64,000 bases of DNA from Haplodiscus bocki (GCA_965655095.1 OZ296656.1:16554001-16618000); one strand, 5' to 3'. Positions 15,303 through 61,282 are shown, numbered from the stretch's first letter. The notes: generated from the sequence alone by a model not told the origin. Numbers and translations: made by a program.

Positions 15303-16123
15303 GTTAAAATTGAATTATGTTATCTGTAGGGAGTCGTACATGAGCTCCTATCAAGAGGTAACTAAGCTCGAGCACTGTACCCAAAGATGCACTCTTGCAA
15401 ATCATCTCTGGCTTCACAGATGCATCTCTTGACTGGTGGGTAGTAAGATGTCTTTTACCTCACAGTTCATCTTTGGCTTAATAGAAAAGTGAATTTTCAA
15501 CTCGGAGGTTTAATTCATCCATGTGAAATTTGGAAATTAGTGTGAAATGAAGGTTGGAAGAAATTTAACGCAGCTGAGGTTTAAAAGCTATAATTCCATA
15601 ACATTTTTCATAGTTTGAATCATGAATTACCAGTTATGACAGAATGGAACCGTTGAAAGCAAAAGAGTTATAAACATGCCTATGCAGGCGATAGCGGATC
15701 AATGAACAGGAAATGGATTGAGTTTTGGATACCAGAATGGCATGCCCTCTCAATACTTTTCGTTTCAGAAGTTTATTTTGTTCGAAACAAACATTGGCCG
15801 TATCAGGGACCACAGAGCGACAACAATGTTCAAATTTTTAAAAACTGAGGAGGAAATTTTGGTAATAAACACATTTTTAACAATATGTGAAAACAGGACG
15901 AACGACAAGCTTTTCCGTTTTTAACAACAAACAACTTTTTAATCAATTTTTTTTAAATTGGAAAAAAAATGAAAAATACCTTGTTGAAAAAGAGGCTGTC
16001 TTCTCGTGTTTTCCTAATATTTTTGAAGCCTTCTGCGCGTCAAGTCCGCGTAATTTGTAATTTGGCGGAAATCACCGCAGCAGGCTGTGGTCCGTTACTT
16101 GCATGGTTGTTGGCTCTTCCTCC

Positions 16124-16287
16124 TCCCCCCCCCACACACACACACACACACACGATATTTTTTTCAACTTTTGAATCAAATTGTCTTGAATTTTGGCACT
16201 ATTATTCAACACTTCTTCAAAAATATTCAAACCTGCAAAAGTCTTATTATTTTCTAATTGAAATTCAATTTGAATGAATTTCTGGCA

Positions 16288-16340
<53 letters not shown>

Positions 16341-16353
16341 GGGGGGGGGGGGG
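16124..16353. repeat. MITE-like element with inverted C-run/(CA)n ... (TA)n(TG)n/G-run termini
   Basis: The left end, a C-run followed by (ac)n, mirrors the right end, (tg)n followed by a G-run. The core (cacacgatattttttcaa..ttattcaaca..gaaattcaatt) recurs at about 29597-29770. Confidence 0.65.
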
Positions 16354-16414
16354 CAGTTTCTCTTTGTTTACCCTTTTGACTTTTGAGTGGCTTACGTGTT
16401 TGGCTCGTGCATAG

Positions 16415-16578
16415 GGTGAAGTGAGAGAAGTGTTGCGAGAACTGGTGCGAGAGAATGACGGGAGAGAGCGGGTGCAGACTAGAGTGTTGGTGGATGAGAA
16501 GCTGGACATGGCCGAATACTTGCTCGACTCTGATCTCATTGCATTCGGAGCTGCTGTCGAATCTGGACAACTCACCGC
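16415..16578 (+). CDS. IFT172: IFT172 coding exon
   Basis: GEVREV...EYLLDSDLIAFGAAVESGQLT(A) resembles YTLDEGLIEFGTAIDDG. atag acceptor, gttagc donor, phase 0/2. Confidence 0.9.
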
Positions 16579-17294
16579 GTTAGCTCTCTTAAACACTTCT
16601 TCGTGGTATCTAACTTAATTCCGTCGCACGCTGTGATACCCAAGAGTCAGAGTCATCTAAAGCCGATGAATTTACCTCAAAAGTGCGGGTTTTTGCTTTT
16701 ATACCACCACTCGGACTTTAAAATTATCTTTCCACAAACACATAAAGGATATTTTCTCCGATTGGCTCGTTTGTAAGTTGAAACATTGCACTGTTTATCC
16801 ATTCGCTGATCAATTATTCCGCGGGGGGTGTTAATTTGGTTGGGCGTGTTGAAAGAGCGAACCCAAAGTGAACTTCGTAAAGAATTTCAAATACAAGTCA
16901 TTAACAAAATCGGACATTAAATGCAACATTGCTTCCTCGAGCAAGAGTTGTGTTCAACATCAGGACCCAACTTATAAAACATTTGACCTTTTAAAAATTC
17001 TGACTGTAAAAATAGAATGTGTATTGGAAAGCGGCTTGTGCATAGTTTTTTTTATTCTGTCCAAAACTTACATTTTGTGATGTCATCAAAGCGTCCAGTC
17101 ATCTAGTATAAACTCTCAAAAGGGGCCCCATTTTGAAAGATCTTCGCTGGTGCTTGCTTATTTTCGCGTTCTGAGAAATGCACAATTTTTGAACATTGGT
17201 TTGGAAAATGAATCACAGCGTTCTAAAAGGTAATGTTTCACATAACAATGTTCTGAATATGAGACAGTGTGGGCAGTGTATAACGTGTCCCCGG

Positions 17295-17447
17295 AAAAAC
17301 GTTACATGTAAAATTTTCAAGCTCTGAAAACGATAATAAAAGTAGACAAGACATCGGAGATAAATAACTTTAAGCTGTTTTGACGTCTTGTTGACAAATA
17401 TTGGCCATTTTGAGAGCTCGAAATTTTTTTTACATGTAACGCTTTTT
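17295..17447. repeat. Short inverted-repeat element (~35-bp arms)
   Basis: aaaaacgttacatgtaaaattttcaagctctgaaaa pairs with ttttgagagctcgaaatttttttacatgtaacgctttt across a spacer of about 75 bp. Confidence 0.7.

Positions 17448-18038: not shown

Positions 18039-18039
<1 letters not shown>

Positions 18040-18122
<83 letters not shown>
18040..18122. repeat. (AG)n microsatellite, ~41 units
   Basis: Directly visible. Confidence 0.98.
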
Positions 18123-18126
<4 letters not shown>

Positions 18127-19468: not shown

Positions 19469-19622
19469 AGCTATGAACTACTTGGAGAATCTGGATGCCA
19501 CTCCCGAAACAGCTGCGCACTGGAGGACGTTGGCCAAACTGAGTTTGGATCAGCTGCGAATCCCAATCGCACAAAGATGCTACGCCGAGTTGGGCGATAT
19601 TGCTAAAGCACGCTATCTCAAA
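19469..19622 (+). CDS. IFT172: IFT172 coding exon (not in the ORF track)
   Basis: AMNYLENLDATPETAAHWRTLAKLSLDQLRIPIAQRCYAELGDIAKARYLK resembles TPETEAMWKTL..AERCFSALGQVAKARFL. gacag acceptor, gtaggt donor, phase 2/0. Confidence 0.93.
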
Positions 19623-28456: not shown

Positions 28457-28645
28457 AAAATAGTAGACATGGCACATGAGCGCGGTCTGGAACGGTATGA
28501 GCCGGAAGACAAGCCTGGTCTGGACCATGACACGCGTCAGGGAATTATGTGGAGAGCCATTGTGGAGGCAGAGCCGGAGATCAAAGCCAGAATTCACATG
28601 CTCAAAAAAGAATTCTTTCACGCTCAAATGACTCTGCTCGAAAAT
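28457..28645 (+). CDS. IFT172: IFT172 coding exon
   Basis: KIVDMAHE...EIKARIHMLKKEFFHAQMTLLEN resembles [22 protein letters not shown]. taag acceptor, gttcgt donor, phase 0/0. Confidence 0.88.
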
Positions 28646-28731
28646 GTTCGTTGAAACGTAATCCGATTATCCCAAGAGAAATTTGAGATTTGGACTATTT
28701 GTATAACCGGGCTGTGTCTGGTCCATTTTAG

Positions 28732-28851
28732 GATCAGTTAGACAAGGCGGTGCAGATGTTTATCACCATCGGAAAATGGGAGCAAGCGCTGCAGTTGGCA
28801 GAAGAGAGAAATCATCCAGACTTAGAAAAACTGAGAAACGAATGCAAAGAT
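28732..28851 (+). CDS. IFT172: IFT172 coding exon (not in the ORF track)
   Basis: DQLDKAVQMFITIGKWEQALQLAEERNHPDLEKLRNECKD resembles GHPALEKLR. Follows an 86-nt intron; tttag acceptor, gttagt donor, phase 0/0. Confidence 0.92.
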
Positions 28852-29390: not shown

Positions 29391-29525
29391 TGGCTGAAGA
29401 AGCATCATCAGCAGGAGAAGATCGCGGCTCTGTACGAGGCAGAGGGGCAATACGAGAGTGCAATATTCGAGTACATCAAAGCTGGCATGCCGTCCAAAGC
29501 CGCGAACCAGATGATGAAACGACAG
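29391..29525 (+). CDS. IFT172: IFT172 coding exon
   Basis: WLKKHHQQEKIAALYEAEGQYESAIFEYIKAGMPSKAANQMMKRQ resembles WLMDTQQEE..YLKAGLPAKAA. tttcag acceptor, gtctat donor. Confidence 0.92.
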
Positions 29526-30487: not shown

Positions 30488-32083
30488 TCACTCGGCCATT
30501 CTAGAGAGTGGAATCTTTGTCGTTTTTGTACCTTTTGAAACTGAAGCACTGCGTTGTGAAGCAGAATCAGTAGTCTGCGAGCTATATGAACTGGTTTTTG
30601 ATGCTGCTGTACTCTCAGTTGCTTTTTCGTCAGCAGCTTTTGACGTAGCACCACTGAGTCGCGCTTGGACCTTGCTATACTTAGATTTTGCGACTGATTT
30701 CGTGCCTCCGGAAGGTTTATGTGGCAATTTTGACCCTATGGGTTGCTCTCTTGGTCCGCGTTGGGGTTCTTCCTCGACGGGTGGAGGTCTAGTGCCACTG
30801 GGTTGAGGTTTTGCAGTACTTGGTTTTGACCGGACAACAGATTGTGGAGCTCCTGAAGCTTTACGGGGTGTTCCTGAAGCGAATGGTCGCTGCCGTTGTT
30901 CTACATCAGAGCTTTTCCGTTCTGCGAGAGAATGCGCTTCTTCCAGATCGTGTTCCAACTCTGATCCCGGTTTGGATTGTGGGCGTGAAAATTTTTGCTG
31001 GGATGCTTCTTCAGGTTCTGGTTCGGGAGGTTTCGGACTTTCTCGTCCTTTGGGTGCCGGTTTTTGAGGTGGTTGCCGTGGTCCACTTTTGGGTTCTAGT
31101 TCTGACTCTGGAGGTTTTTCTTGTGATCCACCTCTTTGTTGCGTATCCGGACGTTCTTGCCCTGATGCTACTTTAGATTCCGGATCTGTGCTTTTGCGTT
31201 CTGCAAAAGAATGCGGGTCGTTGAGATTGTGCTCCACCTTCGATGCGGGTTTAGATAGTGGGCTCGGATGTCTTTGCTGTGTTGTTTCTTTGGGCTCTGA
31301 TTCTGGAGGACCTTTGGATTCGAGTGTTGGAAGTGCTAGCCGAGGTTTCTCTTTAGGTTCTGGCTCTGAAGTTTTCTTTGATCCGCCTTTAGATTCCGTT
31401 TGAGAAGGTTCTAGAGGTTCATGATCAGGTTCTGACATTGGTTTCTGCTTTGATCCTTTCTTTTCAGCTTCCGAAAATTTCTTGCTTCCTTGTGGCCCTT
31501 TTGCTTCCTTGGGTGCTTTCTTTCTTCCTTTGCCGCCTTTATCTCTCTGAGCATTTCCAGCATTGGCTTCTCCCTCGCCACTTTCATTTTCGAAGTCGTA
31601 GTAGTCATCATCATCGGTGTCTGGAATGTCAATTCCTGGATACTTTTCCTTATCAGGTTTAAAAAGTTCGGGCGAAGGCAGCTGTCTCTTTCTACTGCAC
31701 TTTCGTTTGGGAATCTTGTTGCTCGCATGGTTTTCTTTGCAATGCTTGAGTGCATCCAAGTACAACTGCTTCCAAGCGGCTGTCTGTGACTTCAAACTTT
31801 CATTCTTCGTCTCGATTTCCTTCATCCGTGACTTGCTTTCGTCACTGAGGACACTTTCACCTGCGTCGGCGTCACCAGCGCCGTTGGCCCACTCCTGAAC
31901 TCTGTCCAGAATATCTCGCAATGCTTTCAGCGCCTCACTAGCCCTCTGTTGGCCCTGTATGTTCTCGCTGTCTGCTATTCGTTTCTCGAGGTTGCGAAGT
32001 CTTTGCATCTGTTGCTGGTAGAAGCGATCAACTTCGCGAGCCAAAGCTATGCCATTTTGTTCGGCTTCGGGTGACTTGACATT
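30488..32083 (-). CDS. Nested antisense gene, last coding exon (coiled coil, acidic patch, P/E/K/S-rich disordered tail)
   Basis: The 518-aa ORF extends to a tttcag acceptor at 32084 (NVKSPEAEQNGIALAREV...), phase 0, with TGA at 30488. Coding-like composition. Confidence 0.88.
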   Translation of the reverse strand, partial: NVKSPEAEQNGIALAREVDRFYQQQMQRLRNLEKRIADSENIQGQQRASEALKALRDILDRVQEWANGAGDADAGESVLSDESKSRMKEIETKNESLKSQTAAWKQLYLDALKHCKENHASNKIPKRKCSRKRQLPSPELFKPDKEKYPGIDIPDTDDDDYYDFENESGEGEANAGNAQRDKGGKGRKKAPKEAKGPQGSKKFSEAEKKGSKQKPMSEPDHEPLEPSQTESKGGSKKTSEPEPKEKPRLALPTLESKGPPESEPKETTQQRHPSPLSKPASKVEHNLNDPHSFAERKSTDPESKVASGQERPDTQQRGGSQEKPPESELEPKSGPRQPPQKPAPKGRESPKPPEPEPEEASQQKFSRPQSKPGSELEHDLEEAHSLAERKSSDVEQRQRPFASGTPRKASGAPQSVVRSKPSTAKPQPSGTRPPPVEEEPQRGPREQPIGSKLPHKPSGGTKSVAKSKYSKVQARLSGATSKAADEKATESTAASKTSSYSSQTTDSASQRSASVSKGTKTTKIPLSRMAE

Positions 32084-32972: not shown

Positions 32973-33160
32973 CCCTAGATTATTCTTGGCATTGAGAACT
33001 CTATCGTAAATTGAATTGGTGGCTCCCTCAATTTGTCCGAGTTCTCTTTTCATTTGGAAGTCTTTTGTGAAATCCGCATCTTGGTTTGCCAATTCGCGAC
33101 TTAAATTCTCCAGAGCTGCTGAAAGCTCTCTCGAGTTGGCCAAGTTCTTGTCTTTCATGT
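32973..33160 (-). CDS. Nested antisense gene, exon 3 (coiled coil)
   Basis: MKDKNLANSRELSAALENLSRELANQ...NAKNNLG. ttgcag acceptor, gttcgt donor, phase 1/0, matching both neighbouring exons. Confidence 0.85.
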
Positions 33161-35636: not shown

Positions 35637-35857
35637 TTTGCAGTTTCTTGAGCTGACCCTCAGTGAGTTCTGTGTCTGCTTCTAACTGTTCCACCTTGCT
35701 CTTCATCAGTTCGTCCAGTCTTTTTTGTTGTCTCTCCACGTACTGCTTGATCTCGTTCAACATGCTCACAGCACTTTGGAGACGCTGGTCTGCACCATCG
35801 GTGGCCGTCCCTTCAGTTACAGAAGTTTTCACTGGTTGCGGTGCCGGAGACGGGGCT
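35637..35857 (-). CDS. Nested antisense gene, exon 2 (coiled coil)
   Basis: APSPAPQPVKTSV...LNEIKQYVERQQKRLDELMKSKVEQLE...KKLQ. ttgcag acceptor, gttagt donor, phase 2/1. Confidence 0.85.
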
Positions 35858-37460: not shown

Positions 37461-37783
37461 CCTGCCAAGATGACGTTGGGAAGCAGGCTGTGTGATGATT
37501 GAATTGCAAACCTCTTGTTTCTCAAGATGTAAGATACAAGCACAAAAATAACGAATGAAGAGGCTAGTGCCAGTGTGACGCAGTATGAGTCGTTTATGCC
37601 TGAAGAGAATGTTGGGAATGAGAATAAGAATCGTGAAGGTGGAGCCGCGGGCGGTTTGGAGCGAAAGAAGGTGAAGACCAGTCTGAGGAACGATCTCCCT
37701 ACCGTCATAATGGGAGAGTCAGGACTGCAGTATTTGTCCACCATACTGCCACTCTTGCATGCCAGGTCCAAATCATCAGACAT
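37461..37783 (-). CDS. Nested antisense gene, probable first coding exon (contains a transmembrane helix)
   Basis: MSDDLDLACKSG...YCVTLALASSFVIFVLVSYILRNKR...VILA(G). The gg|gtttca donor is phase 2, matching exon 2. The start codon is uncertain; an in-frame ttcag acceptor at 37853 allows further upstream exons. Confidence 0.65.
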
Positions 37784-43442: not shown

Positions 43443-43522
43443 GTCTTTCCAAGCGTAAAAGCTGAAGTGATTGAACAGCTGTGATTGGAACGTTCTAGAG
43501 ATGCATTTGTATTGTATTGCAG

Positions 43523-43650
43523 GATCTCATGTCCAATTCGTCTCTGTTGGATTCCGTCATCAAAGAACTGTGTGAGCGCGAATTCTACATCAAGGCAGGG
43601 GAACTGTATGAAACTGCTCATGTGTACGATCGATCACTCAGACTTTACCG
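43523..43650 (+). CDS. IFT172: IFT172 coding exon (not in the ORF track)
   Basis: DLMSNSSLLDSVIKELCEREFYIKAGELYETAHVYDRSLRLY(R) resembles ELLANTELVE..ELYERAGDLFE. ttgcag acceptor, gttggt donor, phase 0/2. Confidence 0.9.
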
Positions 43651-46039: not shown

Positions 46040-46229
46040 AATGTCAAAAGACAAAGAAGGTTTCTCAAACGCAGTAAGACTGGCACGTGAACATGACTTG
46101 GGAGTAGATGCGAGAGATCTTCTGGAGGAGTACGCCGACTATCTCTATGACCAGATGGAGTTTGAGATGGCCATGGAGAAATACCTGCAAGCCTCGGAAC
46201 TTGTGAAAGCACTTAAATCTGCGTTCAAG
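46040..46229 (+). CDS. IFT172: IFT172 coding exon
   Basis: MSKDKEGFSNAVRLAREH...LEEYADYL...KALKSAFK resembles AVELAR..LEEAWGDHL. tttag acceptor, gttaag donor, phase 2/0. Confidence 0.9.
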
Positions 46230-47348
46230 GTTAAGACTATTCAATGAATAATTTATTCAAAAATGAATGCAATATTTTCCATACAATAACTTTTTTCAAG
46301 AAGGAGAATCAGCAAGACACCCGGCTACAACTGGAGTATTTTCCACGCTCCAACTTTGTTAAAATCGCCGTTTGAGGAAGAAAAATACTGTTCTATATGC
46401 GTTCTATATCATATTGGCTAAATTTTCCCAATTTTAAAAATCACATTTTAAAAAAAACCCTAAATTTTGGTCACAAAAAGGTATTTTTCAGAAATATTAC
46501 CGTTCTATCCGAATTGTACATCAGATTTGCTGGTTTTCTCCCATTTTTCGAAAAAAAACAAATTTTTAAACTGAGAAAACTCTATTTTGGTACGTTTTGA
46601 ACAAAACGTAAAAAACGCACGCGTTGAGTGCATAATTATTTTCCAGCCACATTAAAATTCGGCGGGAAATAATTAGTTGTATGTTTTTGTCAAATATACA
46701 TTTATAACGTGCAGAGCCGTGCTCACGAAGAGTTGTTGAATTGAGCAAGCTTCTAAAATGTAGTCATGACGTGGTCGGTCTATGCACCATTGCATTAAAA
46801 AACTGTTCCATTTTGGAAAACCAATGCTAGTGACTGTGGTACGCCTATAACACTAGATACTGTGTCATTATTTTTCGTAAAAAGGCCTGATTAGTATAGT
46901 AGATTTAATCTGTTTCCCACCGTGTATTCAACGAACTGTTTGGGTGATCAAGAATTTTATGGTTCTCTTTAATTTCAGACCAAGATTACAGGTCAGGAAC
47001 GCACTAAAAGCGTCCTTCTGCTAATTTTTGCATTTTTGACAAATTCCGACAAATTTAAAAAATGCGACGTTTTTACCAGAAAAAAAGTGATTTTTTTTGT
47101 CTGAACATCCATGATTTTTGAAAAACAAAGAACCCCAATTATATTTTGGGCCTTTCTGGGCGGCGCCGACTTGAGACGTTCCGAGCTTGTTATTTTTCTA
47201 GTTTACTTGTAGTTCAGTTATTACTTGAGAAAATATTAATATAAATAATTGCGATTATTTATTTAGTTTCAAACATAGCTGTTTTGCAATCATTTTTTGT
47301 TTGCAATAGCATCGCTATTATAATTTGAGCCGCCCTGTTGTGTTGTAG

Positions 47349-47549
47349 GCGAACAGCATCATGAGAGCGGAGGACATCTTCGAGACAATAAAAGAGTCGC
47401 CGGGAGGGAAAGAGAACTTCAACAGGAATGCGAACAGGGGGGCCAACGCCGCGGGGGGTGATGACAATTTGACTTATGAAGCATGGGCCATCAAGTTGGG
47501 ACAGTATTACGCAACTCTGTTGTCGGGCAATAAAGAACGAAACATGAAG
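47349..47549 (+). CDS. IFT172: IFT172 coding exon (with N/G/A-rich insertion)
   Basis: ANSIMRAEDIFETI...KLGQYYATL...RNMK. tgtag acceptor, gtcagt donor, phase 0/0, colinear with flanking exons. Confidence 0.85.
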
Positions 47550-47954
47550 GTCAGTTGAGTTATGCAACTATTATCATATGCATATTTATACATTTCGTTA
47601 TAAAAATCATCATCGGAAACTTGGAAAACACACCGAACCACCAAGTACATCTTCAAGGTCGGTGTTTGTTGCTGACAAAGATCTCGGTAGATTTTCATTT
47701 GTTTTTGAACAAATTAGTGTTCAATGATCGAGCCCCGTAGAAACCTAATTTGCTGAAACGAACCGAAGTGTGGTACGTTCTCGCTTCCTTTCACACCATA
47801 ATTTTTTCAACCTATTCACTTGTGGAAGTGCAAATTTGGCACTGGTAAAATTCGCGACAAGTAGTTGATTTGGAATTTTTAAAGTAGAAAATGAAATTTA
47901 CCATCGAAACTTGTGACTCCTGTACTGAATTATGTATACTTTTTGATGTTTCAG

Positions 47955-48142
47955 AAAGCGCAAAAATACTTCCTGGAAGCAAACAGCGTAGAGCACATAA
48001 TTCGAATGTACAAAGATGCAGGGCATTGGCAGAAGGCTTACGAATACTTGTGTGAAATCGGAGCCAAGCAGGAAGCTAATCAATTCTTACAACAGCAGGC
48101 AGACATTTGCATCTCTGAGAAACGATATACAGATGCCGAAAA
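47955..48142 (+). CDS. IFT172: IFT172 coding exon
   Basis: KAQKYFLEA...IRMYKDAGHWQKAY...RYTDAE(K) resembles MYTQAGRWEQAH..KYREAER. tttcag acceptor, gttggt donor, phase 0/2. Confidence 0.92.
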
Positions 48143-50090
48143 GTTGGTTTTCTATTTAAATCAGTAACTGAATGTCTTCACTGTAAGAATTTTGGCGAGG
48201 TTGCAATGGTCCTCACCGTGGCAGGTTTCTGTTTCTAAAAGAGGTTGCGTATTTATGGAAAGAACGATTAATTTGAATAAAATCTTATCCTAAAGTTTTC
48301 ATGATATCTCCAAATTATCCATTAATTGGCAGTAATTTCAAGAGAGAACAAGCCAAAAACGGCTCAAGTTGGTGCGACCCTCATAGATTAAAATACTTCG
48401 AAATGCATTTTGAAGAGTTCTGGTCTTTCCAAGAATATCATACCAAAGGTATCTGCCGCAATCCCTGCAGTGTTTACCACCCGAGGGTAGAATAGAGCAT
48501 TCTTAGTACGACAGGGATGGGGTAGAGGAGAAGCAGGGATGTCTTAGTACGTGTCCATGGATATTCTTGGGGCTAGAGGTAACTTACTAAGGTGCATCGC
48601 TGGTTTTTCTAACTTATTTCTGGGCCCAGCCCCAGGGCCGTAGTAAGTTATCTATCTATCTCCCAAGTAAGTACACATTACATAATAGTTTAACGTTCTG
48701 ATAGTTTATAAATTCGCCGGAAACCAAGCCTAACTAACCCCGGGAGGTGAAACATGAGGAAAATTATGTCTGTTGGAAATATTGCAGAGAAACATGTCTG
48801 AAAATTTTGAAAATGCTTCGTTTTGGATTAATTCAAAATTTTATTGCTTCCATTTGGCTGATTTTACAAACTTGCTTTATTTTGTTTTTTTTTTGGATAA
48901 GATTATTGTTGCCGTTCTGTGAACCGACGCGAAATGCATGGGTAGGGAAGCGACTATCGATTTTTACTATTTCTCTTGTGTACATTTCTGTAGTGGAAAA
49001 CACAAAACGGAACAAGAAGAGATTTTGGTACTAAGTTGCTCTTATGGGGTGGAAGGCATTCGTACTTAGGTACATCCTAAGTATAGGGCATTGTTACTAC
49101 GCTGCATGTATGTGCGCAGGGACTTTTTTGTTACGGGTTATATCTCGAAGGGTGGGGTTCATACCTGCACCCGTAGTTAGTAATCGCGGTGGCGGTGGTT
49201 CCGAGATCGATTTTCCACCAGCAATTTTGTCACCCCAATTCTTGTGGATAATCGCATGTGACCTTTAACGGAAAGGTCGAGCTCCATCATCTTTCTTAAC
49301 AATAAAGCGCCCAAAAATTTATTTTCGAACATTGATAATCGATTTTGGCGGTTATTCGATCTAATATGGCAAGGTTGGCAGATAATCAAGGAACAAATGC
49401 ATTACATATAGCGAAGCAAGAAAGGAAGTGGTGCCGCTGAGAGGTGAGGTAAGCGAGAACTGCAGTGGGCCAATCACAACACGAGCGATCAATCAAATCT
49501 GTCAATACAAATGTTTCGGAATGAGTCACGCCAATAGTCGGGCTTGTTTGCACGCAATGACCATTAATAGCTTTTGTGTTTCTCTACTTTGACAGGGAGA
49601 AGTGCTTGGTGAGACATCAAATTTTCAAGGTATCCATTAATTTCAGGATCAGAACAACAGGCCAAGAACTCGAAAAGAATGTTTATATGTAAGAAATTTG
49701 TGAGTAATACCCTTGCATATACTGAATGGCATAGACCAAAGGCATTGACCAAAAATATCTGGACCATTAACTTCAGGCAGTAAATATTGTGCAAAAGTTC
49801 CGTCCCTCTACCAAATTTCCAGTTTTTACTAAAATTTTCAAGATTTCTTCACCAGAAAAACGTGATTTTATAAATTTTATTTTGTCCGCAAAGCTACGAT
49901 TTTTCAAAAACAAAGGACCCATGGTTGTTTTGAGCCTTACGGGCGGTGTCGACTTGGACTGTTCCGGCTGGCTAAACGCGTAGTTTCCACTTTTTGAACC
50001 TTTTTGAGGGAAATTGTAAGTTTCTGTGATGAAAGTAAGAAATGTTTTGAAGTGCAGTAATGTTGTCCTGAGGTGATGTTTTGTGTTTAG

Positions 50091-50226
50091 GATATTGATG
50101 AAAGGTAAGATGTATGAAGAGACAGTGGAGATGTACAAACGAATTGACGATTACGACAACGTGCTCAGAGTGCAGAGACGACTCGGAATGGGCGATGACG
50201 TATCCATGCTCATCGAACATGCTGAG
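50091..50226 (+). CDS. IFT172: IFT172 coding exon (not in the ORF track)
   Basis: ILMKGKMYEETVEMYKRIDDYDNVLRVQRRLGMGDDVSMLIEHAE resembles AITMYKKHKLYDDMIRL. tttag acceptor, gttaga donor, phase 2/0. Confidence 0.88.
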
Positions 50227-50559
50227 GTTAGAGAGGAACCATGAAAATGTAACCTGATATAAATGCGCTACTGATACGAGTCGTTTTCCGTAAAGCGTTG
50301 TTTTGTGAGCTCATTTTTAATCAATTGTGTTCAGAGTATAGCGAATATATTTATTTCTAATTCAACTTTAACATGCTCCTTTGATGGTCACGAATAGCTT
50401 CCCATTCGATACCTGTAATCTCTTCTATCGTTTTTTCATCAATTTGTTTTTCCCATCATTTTTCGACCAAACTTAATAAAACACTTTTTTTTCGACTTTC
50501 GAATCTCTTTTAACGCATCCAAAAAGCAAAATCTATAGATGCGTTTGTGTTTTATGTAG

Positions 50560-50676
50560 AGACGGAAGCGTGATGGCGATTTCTACGAGGCCGAGAAGTT
50601 GTACATGGAGGCTGGCAGTTGGAAAGAAGCAGTGAATATGTACATGCAACAAGGCAAATGGGAAGATGCCAGAAGG
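50560..50676 (+). CDS. IFT172: IFT172 coding exon (not in the ORF track)
   Basis: RRKRDGDFYEAEKLYMEAGSWKEAVNMYMQQGKWEDARR resembles EAEYHYLEAQEWKATVNMY..WEEAYR. tgtag acceptor, gttagt donor, phase 0/0. Confidence 0.93.
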
Positions 50677-52396
50677 GTTAGTCTGTTGTCTGTTCAACTC
50701 AAAGATGGATTGGAGCATGAATGAACTGAACCAGTAATCATGAATTTTGGTTCAGCGCAACCATTGAGGCAACTGATTCAGCGCAAAAGATTAAATGATC
50801 GTTTGTATTTGGCAGGGTTGGAAAAAATTGAACGTACATAGCAATAAGTCATTAATTAAAATGCATTTCATTTAGTTTATGTTCGGTGAACAACATTAGC
50901 ATTTGCTTAATGTTGCGAAAACTTTAATGTATCTATTATTTTGGCGGATATTTTGGGCGAGTATACCAGTTCGCGGTCCTTTGTTCATCCGGCAACGTTC
51001 AGTTATATATTTTTTCAATTACTTGCCAATTATTTGCGTAAAATACACGGTAGCCTAATTCTCGGCAACAGTGGATTAGTCAGCAAGGTATTCGCTTGAG
51101 TATCAAAACATAAATCGCTTCTGAAGTTCTTTTTCTCAAACTTTTTCTAATTTTTACCCTAAACCAAAAGTGCAAAATCTATCTCCTCGTTCCGGACAGC
51201 CCGCTCGGGGTGCTGGCCTGAACGGGAACTTATTTTTTTTGGACCCCGGATTCTTCGACCGGAGGATGAGCCTCCAAATGTTGTGATTTTCGAAATATGG
51301 CCCTTTAAAGTCCCTAATGATATTATAAGATAGATCTTTCGTATGCATTTCGGCCAAAAGCTGAAAAAAACGAAATTTAAAAGCGTGTTTACTAAACGGC
51401 TGTGGTAATTCGTTTATAGGTGCTGGCTAGGACCCAACTGATGCATAAACCCGACGGATTTTTTGGATCCTTTGGATGGTCTACTGTACTTTGTATTTTT
51501 CTAGAAACGTGCTTTAGAATTCGATTGTTTCTTTTGAGGTTTGGAATAACTGCAGTCGCAGGGCTACACTGGGAGGGAAAATTCCGTTTTTCACGACAAT
51601 ATATTGATGTTCTGCGTCTTGTTACATTCAAATTTTTGTTTTTTCTCGCCCAGAAAGATTTTACTTCTTGCTCTTGTTTCTCGAAAAACAATGTAAACAA
51701 TCTCCACGCATTTTTTTTTCATTTTACTCAACTGTCGATTTTTTTAAACGGCAGGACTCTTGTGTGTCTGACGATCCCGTTGCCTGTCCTCTCCAAGCCT
51801 CTCATTTATTATTTTGTGTGGATTTAACCACTTGCTTTGAGAATCAAACTTCTTTCTTCTCTAAAAATGATTGGGATCAAAAATTAATGTAAACGTTAAA
51901 TGCAAATGAAGCATTTATGTAATTGGGGAAAACTGCATCAACGTTTAGGTAATGAGCTATTGCATTAATAACATTGCCTCATTTTTAATCCCTAGTCTAT
52001 AATATTCCATGGATTCTATAGCAAAGATAAGTTAAGGTTCAGTACTCCAAATTATTCGTATTAAATAATTCAGATAAATCTTAGAGTATAAATAATTTCA
52101 ATAGGAAAGTTGTTGTAAACATTGGACAATTTAGATAGACGGCCTGCAAAAAACCACCTATTATCTACCCTAGCAGTCACCATCGTAATACTAATTTTGT
52201 TTCGTATCAAAATTAGAGTCCAGGGTATTGTTTGATATGGTAGTGTTTAAAAAGTAGCAAGAGTGAACTGTTGTTTGTATTCTACCTTATGGTTTTCGGC
52301 TTTATCAGTTCTTAAATTTTGAAACAAAAGTGAGTATCGCTTTTGAAATGAATATTCCGGTGAACATGTACTGTTTATGCGAACGTTTTTTGTCAG

Positions 52397-52560
52397 GTTT
52401 GTCAAGAGGTGGGAACGGATGAGTCAAGGAGTAAGGAAGGGTTCATTGGGTACTGCTGGGCCAAAGACATGCCCTCTACTGTGAATGCTGCTAAACTGCT
52501 CGTCAACCTCAATCTACTCGACAAAGTTGTCGAAGTATCATGCAACGCTATTGCCAGCGA
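52397..52560 (+). CDS. IFT172: IFT172 coding exon (not in the ORF track)
   Basis: VCQEVG...GYCWAKDMPSTVNAAKLLVNLNLLDKVVE resembles [24 protein letters not shown]. gtcag acceptor, gtaagt donor, phase 0/2. Confidence 0.9.
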
Positions 52561-53927: not shown

Positions 53928-54300
53928 GGTTCCTGATTTTGACATGGCCTTTGACCTTTGCTCAGCGGGAGAACGACCTGACCTGACTGCCAGGGTTCAC
54001 CTGTTGAAAGGTCAGTTCTTGGAGGACCAGGGTCAATTCCAAGCTGCAGAACAGGAATTCATAGCTGCTAACAAGCCCAACGAGGCTCTACTTATGTACA
54101 TACATGAAGGAATGCTCGATGCAGCCCAGAAAGTGGCTGATGCTCACTGCACCGTGGAAGAGAAGAACCAGGTGTACACGGCTTTGGGTAATAAGAAGTT
54201 TGATAAAGGGGATTACGACGCGGCTGAGAAATTGTTCCTCAAGAGTGATAATGTGGAACATTTGGTGTCGCTGTATTTGGATATCAATCGATTGGATAAA
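53928..54300 (+). CDS. IFT172: IFT172 coding exon
   Basis: FDMAFDL..VHLLKGQFLEDQGQFQAAEQEFIAANKPNEALLMYIH..AAQKVADAH resembles [34 protein letters not shown]. tttcag acceptor, gtaagt donor, phase 2/0. Confidence 0.95.
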
Positions 54301-57208
54301 GTAAGTCCAACAAGTCACAGAAAAATTCATCCATTTTGGCATGTCAAAATGCTATGCCTGAAAAATGGTTAGGGTCTGGTAAGAATAATACTTTGCTCGA
54401 TTGTCGACTGCTATCATTTTCTGCCTGCTATTTGCACGAAAGTTCTCCACGTAATGATTTGTTCAATGAAATTTGATGAAACTGTTCAGACTCCAAAATT
54501 TCAGGACCATGACGAAGGGCGCCCAAGAATACGAACGAGATTTTTTGGAAGAGCAAATGGGATAAAATCACACCACCTTTACATATCCGCAAATTTTCCC
54601 ACGCTGCGTTTAACGTAACCCCTCACCGTCGTTTAAAAAAACTTCTGGACCTGGGGGCCAAAATTTCGCGATACCGCTTTTCACATAAACCAAAAAATTG
54701 AAGATACTTGGCCAACATTGTTCTAAAATCAAAGGTTTTGTATCAATAGATTTGCCTGAGAGGCGTTGCCGGCTAGTACTGTGCTGCGAAAGGATATAAT
54801 TCTTGGAGCGTTTCTAACTTGTAAATCTTACGAGCTAGTCTTTCCGACTTGCTCTGAGTGGAATCCTGGATCAGGCATGATGCTCCTGAATTTTTGAAAT
54901 CGACTCTCTATGTTTTCATTTTGGAATTGAGTCTGTTTCAAACCGAGGATAGACGCTATTTGGTTGTGGAGAGAGTGAAACACAAACGGTGAAAAAAAGC
55001 TTTCTCTCCGATTTTCTTCTATAGATTACCTTTAAAAACGAGCGAAATTTCACACAAACGTAGAGTTGAAATCCGCATCCTTTTCTCTTGCAGTGCTCAA
55101 GCTAGCTTCAGGTCAATGAAAGTTGGAGGTGCTAAAATTGTGCCTTTTTTGATCAACAAAGCCGGCGTGAAAGTTGAGAACTTTGCAAATAGAAAAGTTT
55201 TGAGACTCAAGGGCTCCTTTACCTCAGAAAAAAGTCTTCGCGAAATATTCAATTTAAAATCAAGTTCGGTAGAATATATCGTGCGCAGATATTTTTTGGA
55301 AAGAAATCAAGACTGGGACAAACTTTGAAAAATGCAATTTCTTCCATAAACTTTCATTAAAAACTAGTGGAATGTTGCCGTTTCAATATACCAAATCCTT
55401 TTGTTTTGCTTGAGCTAAATTCACGAGGGAACTTTTAAGTGTTAATATAATGCCTTGTAGAAAACGGAGAGAGAGAGAATTGAGAAGTCTGTACGTTTCC
55501 AAAAAAGGATTGTAATGGAAAATTCCTGGATCAGACTTGTTGCTCCCAAAAGCTCAAAACGGAGTTTTCAAACGTGTTCAGCTTCAAATCGAGTCCATTT
55601 AAACCTGAAGAGAGATGCTACATATTTGTGAAGAAAGCAAAACGGAAAATTTTCGAAAAACTCAATTTTCTCCAAACTACCCTTAAAAAGAAATCATTAT
55701 AGACTCAAATTTTCTGCTTGCATGTTGTTCGAGACATAAAGGTCGAAGAAAATCTCAGATTTTGGATAAAACGTTCTAAAGACGTTTAAGTTTTTTGATT
55801 AAAAGTTGATAATTTATTTGTCAAGGAAAATGAATGAAAAGACTTTTGGATGTTGTCTGATGATTCGCAAATCGAACAATTGGGTCCTTCTCTTTTGTTT
55901 TGGAACAGACTCGAGTTAGTTGAAAACAGAGCTGACATGATAGGAAATTACATAGACTAAAAAGGTCCGAAAGGGTTTCCTTTAGGGTCATTTTTCTCAA
56001 TAACTCTCTGGCAAAAACAAATGCAACTGTTAAGCACTCAAAAATGAAAATAATTGTACATTATACATTTTACAAAATTTTTTCGGTCAGTGCCAGTTTT
56101 TAGGACAGTTTCGAAAAATTTTGAACCTCCAAAACACGGATAAATGCAGAGCAGTATAGATGTATGCATTGCACTTCTGTGTATTAGCTAACTTGTTCCT
56201 TTTCCCCGCGCACATTGCCAAATGTTTTTTCAAATTCAATTTAAAGTGAATAACGAAAACCTTTCCAAAGTTTTTTTAAACATATATGAAGAAATATTTT
56301 GAAGATGTATGAAGAAATAATAATACTACCAAAAATAATCTTTTACGAAGAATATTACTTTTTAAAAATGGAAAATTACCCGTGTGGGAGAGGGGGAACG
56401 GAATATGAGCCATGGGACCACTGGGACGCTACGTTATTGTCCACGCCATGTACAGTGAACCAAACCAATCCACCTATGAAATTTGTAAGTCTAAGAATAA
56501 GGAATGGTAGAATCGCGGAGAAAAAATGGAAACTACTGTTTTGATAATCTTGTTGTATAAAGTATAGTCGCAAAATAAATTTGATTTCCAAAATGGCGGG
56601 GGATTGGTCTGTCATGGGGTTTGAACCCTCTATATCAAAGTTTAAATATTGAAATAATCAGGAAAGCTTCAGAAAAATACAGAACTTTCTCAGAGTTTTG
56701 TATTTCGGTTTTGAAAATTTTCGATGCTTTCTGAACTTCACGTGTATGTATACACTCAAAACAAGTTAATCACTCATCCTCAAATTCTGCCATTTTCGTG
56801 CGTTAAAGCAATTTGTGATATGAACGACATGTGAAGAAAAGGTCACAAAAACAACGTTTTGAGCAAAAACACTCAATTTTTAGATAGACAGCTTCAAAAA
56901 TATAAGACTGGCCTCTGTTTTGTTGCCTGAGCTTTTTAATTCTAACCACGAAAGCAAATTCAGGATCTTGGAATGAAGGACTCACTATTTCAACGCATTT
57001 TGTCAGGATTATCGCAGATGAGAAAAACAATAATTGGTCTAGAGTGTTATGCAGTTTGTGTGATAAATAAAGGCGTGGTTAAACGATTTGTTTCATTCCA
57101 TAAAAAAGACGGGACCTGACAAATGAGTGTTATTAAGCAGTTTTTCCTGATAAACGTTGTGTGATAACCTAATTCCTAATGCATGTAACTGAACATGCTT
57201 ATTTTCAG

Positions 57209-57514
57209 GTGCATGATTTGGCTGACAGAGGATACCTTACTCCCGAACAGCTGCACAATCTGTCTTCTATGCGCAGAAGCGATCCAATGGGGGCCTCGGG
57301 TGGAGCAGCCGGGGGCTCCTCTGCAGGCTATGGAGGTGCGTCGTCCATTAGTGGGGCCAGCAAGATCGTAGAAGCGAACAGATTAGCCTCCAACATAAAC
57401 AACCCTGCTGATCTACGCGAAGCTCTCAAACTGCTCTTCTCCATCACTTCTTATGACGTCACTGCTTCATCTACGTCATCGGTGGAGGAACAGTTGCTTC
57501 ATTATAACCAACAG
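57209..57514 (+). CDS. IFT172: IFT172 coding exon (divergent, G/S/A-rich insertion)
   Basis: Open 102-codon exon VHDLADRGYL...HYNQQ. tttcag acceptor, gtaaat donor, phase 0/0, in frame with its neighbours. Confidence 0.82.
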
Positions 57515-58079: not shown

Positions 58080-58256
58080 GCAATGAAGTTGATAGAGACG
58101 TTGTGCATCCAGAACGGAGGCAGATTTGTGGAGAACTTGTCTCTGAAGGAAGGACCCACTAAAGACGCCAATGGACAGACTTACGAGATGAGACTGTCTG
58201 AAACTGTATCAACTGTACTCGCCACACAAACCAAGTTAAACGGAGACTGGAAAAAG
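58080..58256 (+). CDS. IFT172: IFT172 coding exon (divergent)
   Basis: AMKLIETLC...KLNGDWKK. ttgcag acceptor, gttacc donor, phase 0/0. Confidence 0.8.
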
Positions 58257-59106
58257 GTTACCAGCTCTTACCATCTACCCCTTGTAATTCTCTAGTCATT
58301 CCGCCAGAGACGGTTGGGAATCAAATTGGTTCCAATATCTCCACTGGACCAAAATCAGCATTTGTCTAAGTTGTTTACGGATTAACTTGTTTGTTCAAAT
58401 ATTCAATTATTTTGTAGGCAGAGGATAATGAATACTAGCTTTATCTTTTTTCCGCAGTTCCCAAACTATAGAATAATTCATACTTAACTTCAACTTTTGC
58501 AGCTCATGGGAGAAGTTTGAAATAATGAAATTTATTCTTGTACAATTATTGGCTTCAGTGATTTTCAGTCTTTTAGTTCAAATTGATGAAATATTTCGCT
58601 GATTAGAGTTTCAAAATTCAATGCAATGTTTTTCTTAAAATAATCTTTGGTCTAATTTTTGTGTTGTCGAGAAGCTGTTTCCGAAGCATTGAAAAGGATA
58701 GATTGAATTTTAAAACAAAATGTTTGCGTTGTTGGACACCAATAACGAAACAACATTATGAAGCAATAAGTTTTTTCACAGGAGTACAGAAGCAAAAGAC
58801 GTCACTATTTGAGTACATTACTGAGCATGAAAATACAGAGCTGATTTCAATTGAGTGAACTCCTGAGCAAATAATAAAGTACTTTTGGCGCCCAATTTCC
58901 CAGAGCATATCAATTTTACGAGAATCACCAGAGCAAAAGTTTGTTGGATTTTTCATAAGTTTTCATGGGTGTTTATGTAACAAAATTGGATCCCTCCTTA
59001 CACTTGCGCAGCAAGTGCTTTTATGTCACAGGGCTCTGAATTTTTTCTGATCCCTTCACAACTCTCACAAACTCCTAGATTTTGACCAAAAAGAGGAAAA
59101 TGTCTT

Positions 59107-59168
59107 AGGCTCGAACCTGGGACCTTTCACGCTGCAGGTGCATGCTCTACTAACTATGCCATTGCAGC
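59107..59168 (-). mobile_element. tRNA-derived SINE head / tRNA-like pseudogene
   Basis: The minus strand reads gctgcaaTGGCATAGTTAGtagagcatgcacctgcagcgtgaaaggtcccaGGTTCGAGCCt, with Pol III A and B boxes at tRNA spacing. It has no proper acceptor stem and no U33. Confidence 0.7.
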
Positions 59169-59366
59169 TCAGTATTTTTATCTAAAATATGAAGCGAATG
59201 AAATATTATAGCGTTTCTTCCTTGGAATTAACTGAGTTTCTGTACACATGTTATCACTCATGTTTTTAGTAGTATCGTCGCCCCTTCAAAAATCAATTAT
59301 ATTTAGTCGATTTGTTCACTATTTTTCCTTTGGCACAAGTGTTGAGAAGCACAGTTTCACCTCTGT

Positions 59367-59970
59367 GTTAAAAAGTTATGATAACCCCGATTTTGGGTAC
59401 TTTTGGCCAAATTTGAGGTTTTACTCGAAAATCTGATGAACTACAAAAGATACAGAAAATCATTCAGACATTTGTTTAGCTTTGAATCAGGCCTCAGACG
59501 TGGTTTTTCCGATTTTTTGATGAATCGTTCTCTGAAAAGTTCACGCCTATAGAGGGAAGTGAAATGGCTATACCCTATCTTATTACTAAATCGCATTTTC
59601 ACCACCTTAAAACCTTTAATTTCTAAAACGGTAATACATTTCAACAGAAGTTCAGTACCATATCTTCGGGGGAATTGATGCACGACCTATTCAACGGTCA
59701 CAATTGAGAACACAATTTGATTTAACCGCTGAAAAAATGGAATTTTTTTTCAAAAATGGTGAAGAATTTCCAAAGATTAGGTTCGCAAACTCTTTGAATA
59801 ATTGGTGCGAGTTTTAGTCGAATACTTTTATCAATCTTTGTAATTTTTATCAAAGTTCTAAGAAAATTTTAATCTTACAGTTTTCCTCGAAATCTTTTAG
59901 TTTTTTGAGATTTTGGGCTTGAAAAACGCTAATTTTGCTGAAGAGTTCACTTAATTAAAATCAGTACTGT
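59367..59970. repeat. Dispersed ~590-bp repeat, copy 2
   Basis: Homologous to 42855-43442, same orientation. Confidence 0.8.
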
Positions 59971-60027
59971 ACAAGTATGAGAAAAGGAAAGAAATTTTTT
60001 TAAGATGTCAATTTATAATTGTTGTAG

Positions 60028-60264
60028 GGAGTGTCGTTGTGTCTTAATCTATACAACGCCCTCACCAAAGTGAACTATCTCTCTGAAGGCGACAAGTACG
60101 TGGAGTATGCAGTGAAGTTTGCATGTGTGCATCAGCAGTACACGGCCGCTGCCAAGATAGTGAACCATGCTTACGAGGAGGACCACTCCATTGCACAGGA
60201 CCTACTGGCCTTCATCAAACAACAGGCAGTCGCTGCCAGTCGTCAAGAGGGAGACATGGAAGGG
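60028..60264 (+). CDS. IFT172: IFT172 coding exon (last visible in window)
   Basis: GVSLCLNL...QQYTAAAKIV...SRQEGDMEG is positionally equivalent to ELYLNL..EWNKAKRVA..KNQGKVDS. tgtag acceptor, gttagt donor, phase 0/0. Confidence 0.82.
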
Positions 60265-61282
60265 GTTAGTCAACTAACTCCATTATCGGTACTAGCAAAC
60301 CCTTCTTCTACCAGATCGGCTCATTAAATTATCATTCTGTCCAAGGACATTTTTTGTCCAAGGAAGTTTTTTTGGCTTCAGAGTCACTGTTATCACTGAA
60401 TGAATGCGTGAATAAAGCAGACGACTTGATGAACTCACTCGCTTTCTTCATTTGGCATGATCATGATGACGCCAGTCATAACTGAAGCAGAATCACAGAG
60501 TTTTGTTTACTCATTTTTTATTGGCTCGTTATTTTCACTTGCTGACTTCGTTCTTTCGGCAATGACGTCAGAAAAACTTAGACAGTATTGAACAGCCGAG
60601 ATACGGTTCACTGGCTTCATTTTCTGAAGGATTAATCGATCGCTTAAAGCCCGTTGCTCTCACTTCTTTTCGAAATTCTCTGAAACAGCCATAACAGCGA
60701 GTAGGGCCACCAGAGCGACGATGTTTACTATTTGGCCCCTCCTGGATGTGGTATCCTTCTTTCCGCTTGATTTCCCTCAATAATTCCACGTCTGTATTCA
60801 CTTTTTTTCGTTTTCTTTAGGTGGTTGCGAAGAAGTTTCGGAAATTTTGTCAATTTTCGCATGACATTCTCAGCTTTTTTCACGTTTATCAGTCAGTTTA
60901 CGTGACGTGAAATTGCATTCTTTTTGGACTGCTGGTTTCATAGTGCTTGATACCTAGTTGGTGCTCAAGTTTATTACAAGCATTCAATTTCAAGCATACC
61001 ATACGCACATGAAAGCATGCTCAAATTATTATTTTTTCGTTCTATTCGATGATCTAGAATTCAGATTCTCACGCCCTGTGACTCGTGTGGTCCAAGGGCT
61101 TGAAGTGTGGGAAACCACAATTTGTTCATTCTAAATCAGAAATTTGAAGTTATGATCTGTATCAGATCACGAAAGAACAAGGCACCCGGGTACCAGCTGG
61201 ATATCTTCCGCCCTCCAATTTTGTTGAAATCGCGTTTTGAGTAAAAAATACCCTTCTATTTGCGTTCTATATCACATTTGCT

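What the first reader, a model, noticed from the sequence alone, without database searches (positions are those of the whole stretch)
15303..60270. Splice donors are mostly GTT, not GTR: possible lineage-shifted 5' splice-site code
Seen: the 17 IFT172 donors fixed by frame and homology are gttaaa, gttagc, gtaggt, gttcgt, gttagt, gtctat, gttggt, gttaag, gtcagt, gttggt, gttaga, gttagt, gtaagt, gtaagt, gtaaat, gttacc and gttagt. The 3 nested-gene donors are gtttca, gttagt and gttcgt. Position +3 is T in 14/20, C in 2, A in 4 and G in 0. Established: most eukaryotic U2 introns have a purine at +3 (GTRAGT), read by U1 ACUUAC. Inference: this organism has a GTTAGT-like consensus, perhaps through a variant U1 5' end (ACUAAC would pair perfectly), altered U1C/LUC7, or greater reliance on U6 pairing. 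Many of these introns are kilobases long, where weak donors are normally disfavoured.
Basis: partly seen in the sequence, partly recalled or inferred. Interest (0 to 1): 0.8.

Follow-up and report, generated by a model that had tools for sequence, protein, structure and literature searches.

The report
GTT-rich splice donors in IFT172
The introns of this cilia gene really do mostly start GTT, not the usual GTA or GTG, while three related species use GTA/GTG at the same introns, so this species seems to have shifted a core splicing signal; with one locus and no RNA data, a genome-wide shift is unproven.

Summary
Observation confirmed.

Each donor lies where conservation with orthologous contigs of three related species (A, B, C) stops. 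Two of the three nested-gene donors (GTTAGT, GTTCGT) are verified the same way. The third (GTTTCA) is not verifiable.

The T excess is more than chance:
- T is 13 of 19 verified donors, against 40% T after GT in the same introns (p=0.012).
- In the GTNAG context the intron background is only 19% T.
- Relatives have 9 T in 48 donors (Fisher p=3e-4): C is mostly GTA, B is GTG/GTA, A is intermediate at 31% T.
- Background composition is the same in all four species, so mutation bias does not explain it.

This species has stronger +4A, +5G and +6T, so total match to canonical U1 is unchanged (5.9 of 9).

Interpretation partly supported. GTTAGT is the local consensus and is specific to this species, not to the clade. 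The U1-variant idea could not be tested: no U1 or U6 gene and no RNA run were reachable. No other note of this scan on this genome turned up the pattern. Other agents' notes call the genome an acoel; I did not check that.

The parts
15135..15302 (+). IFT172 exon; donor at 15303 AAG|GTTAAA
   Evidence: Frame. Conservation with species C ends here. C has GTAAAG and A' has GTATTT at the same site.
16415..16578 (+). IFT172 exon; donor at 16579 CGC|GTTAGC
   Evidence: C has GTATGT and A' has GTACGT at the same site.
19469..19622 (+). IFT172 exon; donor at 19623 AAA|GTAGGT
   Evidence: C has GTTAGC and A' has GTGGGA.
28457..28645 (+). IFT172 exon; donor at 28646 AAT|GTTCGT (86-bp intron follows)
   Evidence: C has GTATGT.
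28732..28851 (+). IFT172 exon; donor at 28852 GAT|GTTAGT
   Evidence: C has GTCCGT.
29391..29525 (+). IFT172 exon; donor at 29526 CAG|GTCTAT; the 14-kb intron that follows holds the nested gene
   Evidence: C has GTATGG.
43523..43650 (+). IFT172 exon; donor at 43651 CCG|GTTGGT
   Evidence: C has GTAGGC.
46040..46229 (+). IFT172 exon; donor at 46230 AAG|GTTAAG
   Evidence: In species C the intron lies 39 nt upstream (CAG|GTATTT).
47349..47549 (+). IFT172 exon; donor at 47550 AAG|GTCAGT
   Evidence: C has a GC donor, GCGAGT, at the same site.
47955..48142 (+). IFT172 exon; donor at 48143 AAA|GTTGGT
   Evidence: C has GTCAGA and A has GTATGT.
50091..50226 (+). IFT172 exon; donor at 50227 GAG|GTTAGA
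   Evidence: C has GTACAC and A has a GC donor, GCAAGC.
50560..50676 (+). IFT172 exon; donor at 50677 AGG|GTTAGT
   Evidence: The intron lies 12 nt downstream in A (GTCAGC) and 51 nt downstream in C (GTAGTG).
52397..52560 (+). IFT172 exon; donor at 52561 CGA|GTAAGT
   Evidence: C has GTAAGT and A has GTAAGC.
53928..54300 (+). IFT172 exon (TPR region); donor at 54301 AAA|GTAAGT
   Evidence: PDB match to IFT172. A has GTTGGT, B has GTCAGT, C has GTTGAG. Species B splits this exon with an extra intron.
57209..57514 (+). IFT172 exon; donor at 57515 CAG|GTAAAT
   Evidence: A has GTTAAT, B has GTGACC, C has GTAGGA. Species B splits this exon as well.
58080..58256 (+). IFT172 exon; donor at 58257 AAG|GTTACC
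   Evidence: A has GTAAAC, B has GTGCCG, C has GTAGGC.
60028..60264 (+). IFT172 exon; donor at 60265 GGG|GTTAGT; the next intron runs past the window end (more than 19 kb)
   Evidence: B has GTGAGT and C has GTAAGA.
35637..35760 (-). Nested antisense gene, internal exon (5' end not fixed); donor G at 35636, AAA|GTTAGT
   Evidence: tblastx block to species C and a shared junction (KKLQ-N-). C has GTTAGA.
32973..33160 (-). Nested antisense gene, internal exon; donor G at 32972, GGG|GTTCGT
   Evidence: 50% identical to the species C exon, same phase. C has GTTTCA.
30488..32083 (-). Nested antisense gene, last exon (low-complexity protein)
   Evidence: ORF; acceptor tttcag|AAT; conserved in species C as part of a 907-aa ORF.
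37461..37783 (-).
   Evidence: ORF starting at the ATG at 37783. Several other frame-compatible GT sites exist and there is no reliable conservation.

Best explanation
These are ordinary GT-AG (U2-type) introns of an IFT172 gene and of a gene nested antisense in one of its introns. The donor sites are correctly placed.

In the window's species the third intron base is a pyrimidine in 15 of 19 verified donors (T 13, C 2). The local consensus is AAG|GTTAGT. At the same introns three related species mostly keep the canonical purine. Position +3 turns over quickly between species, so each species' composition reflects its own current preference. That preference has moved from A towards T in this species.

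Inferred, not shown: I think the most likely mechanism is a canonical or near-canonical U1 that tolerates a mismatch at +3, much as yeasts tolerate +4U. The loss would be offset by better pairing at +4 to +6, and possibly by a U-G wobble between +3U and the G of the U6 ACAGA box. I expect the bias to extend beyond this locus (T at +3 well above 30% genome-wide), but that has not been shown.
For: Donor placement:
- One open 3147-nt frame through all 17 exons.
- Exon ends coincide with the ends of cross-species conservation, with GT or GC in register in the relatives at 15 of the 17 sites.
- Acceptors are (T-rich)NAG.

The bias is real:
- T is 13 of 19, against a background of 0.40 T after GT (p=0.012).
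- In the GTNAG context the intron background is 19 of 98 T, against 6 of 9 in donors.
- G is absent (0 of 19) although 21% of intronic GTN sites are GTG.

The bias is species-specific:
- 13 of 19 T against 9 of 48 in the relatives (Fisher p=2.9e-4). Against C alone 4 of 26 (p=5e-4), against B 0 of 6 (p=0.005), against A 5 of 16 (p=0.04).
- Among the 17 intron pairs compared between the window and C (two of them at positions shifted by 39-51 nt), T-in-window/A-in-C occurs 7 times and the reverse twice.

Not composition or mutation bias:
- Intron base composition and GTN frequencies are the same in all four species (T 0.40-0.48 after GT).
- The nested gene on the opposite strand also has GTT.

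Compensation:
- Mean matches to CAG|GTRAGT are 5.89 in the window, 5.96 in C and 5.81 in A.
- +6T is 14 of 19 in the window against 20 of 48 in the relatives (p=0.03).

Precedent: lineages with atypical donors mostly keep a standard U1 (Saccharomycotina, Giardia, Trichomonas, Micromonas, Thecamonas). U6 ACAGA pairs with +2 to +6 (10.1101/2022.06.08.495308).
Against: - There are only 19 verified donors, all from one 45-kb locus.
- The finding was picked because it looked extreme. If the true genome-wide T frequency were about 35-40%, a locus like this would turn up occasionally.
- No RNA evidence exists for any junction: no RNA run holds the locus, and the four runs that do are DNA.
- No other note of this scan on the same genome that my searches returned mentions GTT donors. 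Notes on LTR elements quote GTAAGT donors.
Confidence: 0.45

Rival explanations
1. Relaxed constraint plus ascertainment. In this clade the 5' splice site is weakly defined beyond GT and +5G, and +3 is close to neutral in the window's species. T is simply the commonest base after GT (40%). This locus would then be a high draw, noticed because it is extreme.
For: - Donors in all four species are degenerate, for example GTTTTA, GTCACA, GTGCCG, GTACAC, and GC donors occur.
- +3 differs between species at most shared introns.
- Species A already has 31% T.
- The binomial p against the 0.40 background is only 0.012 for 19 donors, and 0.035 for the 17 IFT172 donors.
- The scan looked at hundreds of windows of this genome.
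Against: - In the relevant GTNAG context the neutral T frequency is 19%, not 40%, while donors have 6 of 9.
- G is absent (0 of 19 against 21% expected).
- Relatives with the same background composition clearly prefer A. C has 17 of 26, p=1e-4 against a background A frequency of 0.29. Full neutrality in this species would therefore itself be a lineage-specific change.
- +4 to +6 are closer to consensus here than in the relatives, as expected if +3T is a systematic feature.
Confidence: 0.3
2. Co-evolved U1. This species carries U1 snRNA genes, possibly alongside canonical ones, whose 5' end reads ACUAAC. GUUAGU would then be fully complementary, as Entamoeba's ACAAAC matches GUUUGU.
For: - The consensus is specifically GTTAGT, with strong +4A, +5G and +6T.
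- Mean matches to a +3T variant consensus are 6.37 of 9 in the window, against 5.4-6.0 in the relatives.
- Compensatory U1 changes are documented in Entamoeba and Mastigamoeba (10.1101/2022.06.08.495308).
Against: - Not tested: there is no U1 gene in the window or in the six loci scanned.
- Four of 19 donors are still GTA and two are GTC.
- LTR-element donors quoted in other notes on this genome are GTAAGT.
- The relatives are canonical, so thousands of donors and U1 would have had to change within a short divergence in an intron-rich genome. The known co-evolution cases include an intron-poor lineage, and most lineages with atypical donors kept a standard U1.
Confidence: 0.15
3. Local effect. 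The bias is peculiar to this gene or chromosomal region, through regional mutation, gene-specific regulation by weak donors, or young introns sharing a transposon-derived end. It would say nothing about the spliceosome.
For: - All donors come from one locus.
- The genome is reported to hold transposon-derived introns (note s1-359258).
- Intron positions here do turn over between species.
Against: - At least 15 of the 17 IFT172 introns are shared in position with one or more relatives, so they are old.
- Intronic GTN composition at the locus is ordinary.
- The nested gene on the other strand shows GTT in both the window and species C.
- I made no dedicated search for repeats shared between intron starts; blastn and tblastx of the window against the relatives' loci matched only the exons.
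Confidence: 0.07
4. Mis-set boundaries. The true donors would be nearby GTR sites.
For: In-frame GTA or GTG sites lie within 45 nt of 11 of the 17 donors.
Against: - Using them would delete residues conserved in three species, or add residues absent from all of them.
- The one I traced (+33 at 15303) lies beyond an in-frame stop.
- At 15 of the 17 sites the relatives have their GT or GC at exactly the aligned position.
Confidence: 0.03

Closest known systems
Canonical U2-type GT-AG introns with a GURAGU donor read by the U1 5' end ACUUAC
   Same: GT at +1/+2 in 19 of 19 donors and AG at every acceptor. T-rich tracts precede the acceptors. +4A, +5G, +6T and -2A, -1G are preferred. The reading frame is restored exactly.
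   Different: +3 is a purine in only 4 of 19 donors (T 13, C 2, G 0). G is the second commonest base at +3 in most animals (my own knowledge); here it is absent.
Entamoeba GUUUGU donors with a co-evolved U1 (AACAAAC), and Mastigamoeba with U1 ACGUAC (Roy and Bowser, bioRxiv 10.1101/2022.06.08.495308)
   Same: A lineage-specific shift of the donor consensus that puts U at +3. It raises the same question of whether the snRNA followed.
   Different: Entamoeba is intron-poor and nearly uniform: 88-90% of donors are GUUUGU in all five species, and both +3 and +4 have changed. Here only +3 differs, the preference is about 70%, the genome is intron-rich with kilobase introns, related species do not share the shift, and no U1 sequence is available.
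GUAUGU-type lineages (Saccharomycotina, Giardia, Trichomonas) that keep a standard U1
   Same: One systematic mismatch to U1 within +3/+4 is tolerated without an snRNA change. That mismatch can add a pair with U6 ACAGA. Species C of this clade often uses GTATGT itself (4 of 26 donors).
   Different: The mismatch is at +4 in those lineages, and they are intron-poor. Here it is at +3, in an animal-like intron-rich genome.
Shifted or bulged U1 registers at atypical human donors
   Same: GUU-initial donors can be read if a UAAGU core follows, with U1 paired one position downstream.
   Different: Only GTTAAG (46230) approaches that motif. The dominant GTTAGT does not gain pairs in a shifted register.
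Abundant non-canonical GA/GG donors in the copepod Eurytemora affinis (PMC5714493)
   Same: An animal genome in which the donor rule is loosened in a lineage-specific way. GA donors have also been noted for this genome by another agent (s1-356324; I did not check this).
   Different: Those cases change +2. Here +1/+2 stay GT and +3 changes.

Membership tests
U2-type GT-AG spliceosomal introns | GT (rarely GC) at the 5' end and AG at the 3' end, with removal restoring the reading frame | tested here: met
   17 exons give 3147 nt with no stops. All donors are GT and all acceptors are AG. The nested-gene junctions are in phase in two species.
U2-type GT-AG spliceosomal introns | Pyrimidine-rich tract before the acceptor | tested here: met
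   Acceptor contexts such as ttgttgttttttcag and cgtttttcattgcag. Two acceptors are AAG rather than YAG (15135, 28457).
U2-type GT-AG spliceosomal introns | Purine at +3 (GURAGU consensus) | tested here: not met
   A 4, G 0, T 13, C 2 in 19 verified donors. Positions +4 to +6 do follow the consensus.
U12-type (minor) introns | Donor RTATCCTT | tested here: not met
   None of the 19 donors resembles it.
Lineage with a transformed donor and a co-evolved U1 (Entamoeba type) | The atypical donor is near-universal across the genome | not testable with these tools
   Only one locus of this genome is readable. No RNA runs exist, and walking the same-species contig gave no further exons.
Lineage with a transformed donor and a co-evolved U1 (Entamoeba type) | Atypical donor shared by related species | tested here: not met
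   T at +3 is 4 of 26 in C, 0 of 6 in B and 5 of 16 in A, against 13 of 19 here.
Lineage with a transformed donor and a co-evolved U1 (Entamoeba type) | U1 5' end complementary to the new donor | not testable with these tools
   No Rfam match reached the gathering score in the window or in the 124.5 kb of the six loci scanned.
Shifted-register U1 donors | GU followed by a UAAGU core | tested here: not met
   One of the 13 GTT donors (GTTAAG at 46230) comes close. Five are GTTAGT.

The most novel reading that the evidence does not exclude
Since it split from relatives that still use GTA/GTG, this one species has switched the preferred base at intron position +3 from A to U genome-wide, and part or all of its U1 snRNA gene family has followed (5' end ACUAAC). 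That would be a case of splice-signal and snRNA co-evolution in an intron-rich animal, caught between close relatives.
Probability: 0.15. Interest if true: 0.85.

Novelty: new variant of a known kind. Interest (0 to 1): 0.6.

Why it matters
The 5' splice-site core GURAGU and the U1 5' end are among the most conserved signals in eukaryotes. The documented departures come from protists and yeasts, most of them intron-poor, and whether introns and snRNAs co-evolve is still debated (10.1101/2022.06.08.495308).

Suppose an intron-rich animal with kilobase introns uses mostly GUU, while sister lineages with the same genes and introns use GUA or GUG. Those species would then form a natural comparison set. 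One could ask how thousands of donors can shift, and whether U1, U6 or protein factors changed first.

There is also a practical point. Gene predictors and splice-aware aligners trained on GTR donors would mis-model genes in this genome.

Tried and rejected
- **RNA evidence.** The look-up of sequencing runs returned only four runs. They hold 80-96% of words including introns. Laid on 46000-51999, they are DNA contigs with no splice joints.
- **snRNA genes.** Rfam at gathering score found nothing in the window or in six loci.
- **More donors from the same species.**
  - The window has no IFT172 exon in 1-15100 or 60265-64000.
  - Walking the same-species ENA contig to its end added 15 kb with no exon.
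  - ORFs there have no Pfam match.
  - A word search with an upstream exon ORF of species C found only species C and A.
- **Nested gene's last exon.** A word search with it found nothing.
- **Distant IFT172 proteins.** They are only about 31% identical, too far to fix the boundaries. I used related genomic contigs instead.
- **Composition, strand and mutation-bias explanations.** Rejected.
- **In-frame stop at GT-TAG.** Considered as a reason for GTTAG. No donor is phase 1, so TAG is never in frame.
- **Shifted U1 register.** It fits only one donor.
- **Literature.** Searches for GTTAGT, for acoel splice sites and for acoel U1 found no published donor logo for this group.
- **S. roscoffensis spliced-leader sequence.** It is not in the window.

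Full report
**What is there.** The window is 37% GC and has no N. The ORF at 53944-54372 (+) matches Chlamydomonas IFT172 residues 1135-1246 in PDB 8bd7 (E 4e-21). Other ORFs hit the IF140/IFT172 TPR Pfam model weakly. Distant full-length IFT172 proteins are only about 31% identical to the window's product. That is too far to fix splice sites, so I looked for close relatives.

**Relatives.** The exhaustive protein search returned short ORF-proteins 93% identical to the exon. They lie on long metagenome-assembly contigs in ENA. I fetched and, for species C, merged these loci:
- Species A: L001, plus a second contig from the same sample, L009.
- Species B: L002.
- Species C: L003 to L006 merged into 48.8 kb. 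Its introns are compact.
- A second haplotype of the window's own species: L007, L008 and L010, 98.2% identical over 12.7 kb.

Exons are 67-89% identical in DNA between species. Introns do not align.

**Gene model and donors.** blastn blocks between the window and the relatives end exactly at exon boundaries. Seventeen exons from 15135 to 60264 join into 3147 nt with no stop. A junction-refinement script, which enumerates GT/GC and AG sites and scores the joined translation, gave unambiguous orthologous junctions in C, A and B. The 24-exon model for C is also stop-free. No further IFT172 exon lies in window 1-15100 or 60265-64000, or in the next 15 kb of the same-species contig.

**Nested gene.** Two internal exons and the last exon of the antisense gene are conserved in species C, in the same host intron. 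The junctions are in phase. In all, 19 of the 20 donors are verified.

**Is the T excess real?** The window has T 13, A 4, C 2, G 0 at +3.
- Intron sense-strand composition is T 0.34. After GT it is T 0.41. The binomial p is 0.002 and 0.012 respectively.
- In the context GTNAG, intron background T is only 19 of 98, while donors of that form have T in 6 of 9.
- Background GTN frequencies are the same in all four species (T 0.40-0.48). The nested gene on the other strand also shows GTT. Composition, strand asymmetry and a species-specific mutation bias are therefore rejected.

**Is it a lineage property?** No, not of the clade.

| Species | Donors | A | T | C | G |
|---|---|---|---|---|---|
| Window | 19 | 4 | 13 | 2 | 0 |
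| C | 26 | 17 | 4 | 3 | 2 |
| A (two contigs) | 16 | 8 | 5 | 2 | 1 |
| B | 6 | 2 | 0 | 1 | 3 |

Fisher tests for T at +3 give p=2.9e-4 for the window against all relatives, 5e-4 against C, 0.005 against B and 0.04 against A.

The same intron can carry all variants. At 54301 the window has GTAAGT, A has GTTGGT, B has GTCAGT and C has GTTGAG. So +3 turns over fast, and each species' composition reflects its own present preference. Where C and A agree on the ancestral state (15303, 16579, 50227, 58257), the window changed A to T. I see one likely reverse change, at 54301.

**Compensation.** The window's donors have +4A in 13, +5G in 14 and +6T in 14 of 19. The relatives have 24, 32 and 20 of 48. 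Mean matches to CAG|GTRAGT are 5.89 in the window, 5.96 in C and 5.81 in A. The potential to pair with a canonical U1 is therefore preserved. The mismatch sits at +3, where species C often has it at +4 (GTATGT, GTAGGN).

Roy and Bowser state that U6 ACAGA pairs with +2 to +6. On that register +3 faces the U6 G, so U (wobble) or C would pair there. In the window 15 of 19 donors have a pyrimidine at +3. This step is inference.

**What it most likely is.** It is a real, species-specific move of the +3 preference from A to U, in a clade whose donors are weakly defined overall. Most likely it is handled by tolerance and compensation rather than by a changed U1 (confidence 0.45). The rivals are:
- Relaxation plus ascertainment (0.30).
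- A co-evolved U1 variant (0.15).
- A local effect (0.07).
- Mis-set boundaries (0.03).

The main weakness is that everything rests on one locus. No RNA run holds it, and the four runs that do are DNA. No U1 or U6 gene was reachable.

**Known context.** The closest precedent is Entamoeba: GUUUGU donors with U1 AACAAAC, and Mastigamoeba with ACGUAC. Yeasts, Giardia, Trichomonas, Micromonas and Thecamonas keep a standard U1 despite atypical donors (10.1101/2022.06.08.495308).

Other agents' notes call this genome an acoel flatworm (s1-356324, s1-369320). I did not verify that. It fits the long-branch IFT172, and the 37% GC is close to the 36.7% reported for the LTR-retrotransposon-rich genome of Symsagittifera roscoffensis (PMC9911081). 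I found no published donor logo or U1 description for acoels in the held library. No other note of this scan that my searches returned reports GTT donors.

**Verdict.** It is a new variant of a known kind of phenomenon, lineage-shifted donor consensus. Interest is 0.6, pending a genome-wide logo and the U1 sequence.

Noticed in passing
window 46230, 50677, 53928-54300, 57209-57514, 60028-64; loci L001, L002, L003-L006: Intron positions turn over between the four species. The intron at 46230 lies 39 nt upstream in C. The intron at 50677 lies 12 nt downstream in A and 51 nt downstream in C. B has extra introns inside the exons 53928-54300 and 57209-57514. C has an extra intron inside 60028-60264. 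This fits other agents' notes of transposon-derived introns in this genome.
   Followed up: partly
L001:1200 and merged species C locus position 30102 (orthologous to window 50227 and 47550): Relatives use GC donors (GAG|GCAAGC in A, AAG|GCGAGT in C) at introns where the window has GTTAGA and GTCAGT.
   Followed up: partly
window ~51308; L007:345-7307: A second haplotype of the same species is 98.2% identical. It carries a Ty3/gypsy-type LTR retrotransposon (capsid, RT, RNase H and integrase ORFs) in the intron between 50677 and 52396 that the window lacks. This is an insertion polymorphism.
   Followed up: partly
window 30488-37783 (-); L004:40-2763: The antisense nested gene sits in the same IFT172 intron in species C, where its last exon ORF is 907 aa. 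It has no Pfam match and no homologues by word search.
   Followed up: partly
window ~61500-62800 (-); L007:17574-18884: A 436-aa ORF with a hAT dimerisation domain (PF05699) lies in the intron after the last IFT172 exon of the window.
   Followed up: no
window 63400-63800: A tandem repeat of roughly 56-70 bp with an open frame (NDEYDYERNNIRFIKRNERTMNM repeated). It appears as multiple offset blastn matches between the two haplotypes.
   Followed up: no
window 15135 and 28457: Two of the 17 IFT172 acceptors are AAG rather than the usual YAG (tttcaag|TTG and gtttaag|AAA). The C orthologues have CAG and TAG.
   Followed up: no
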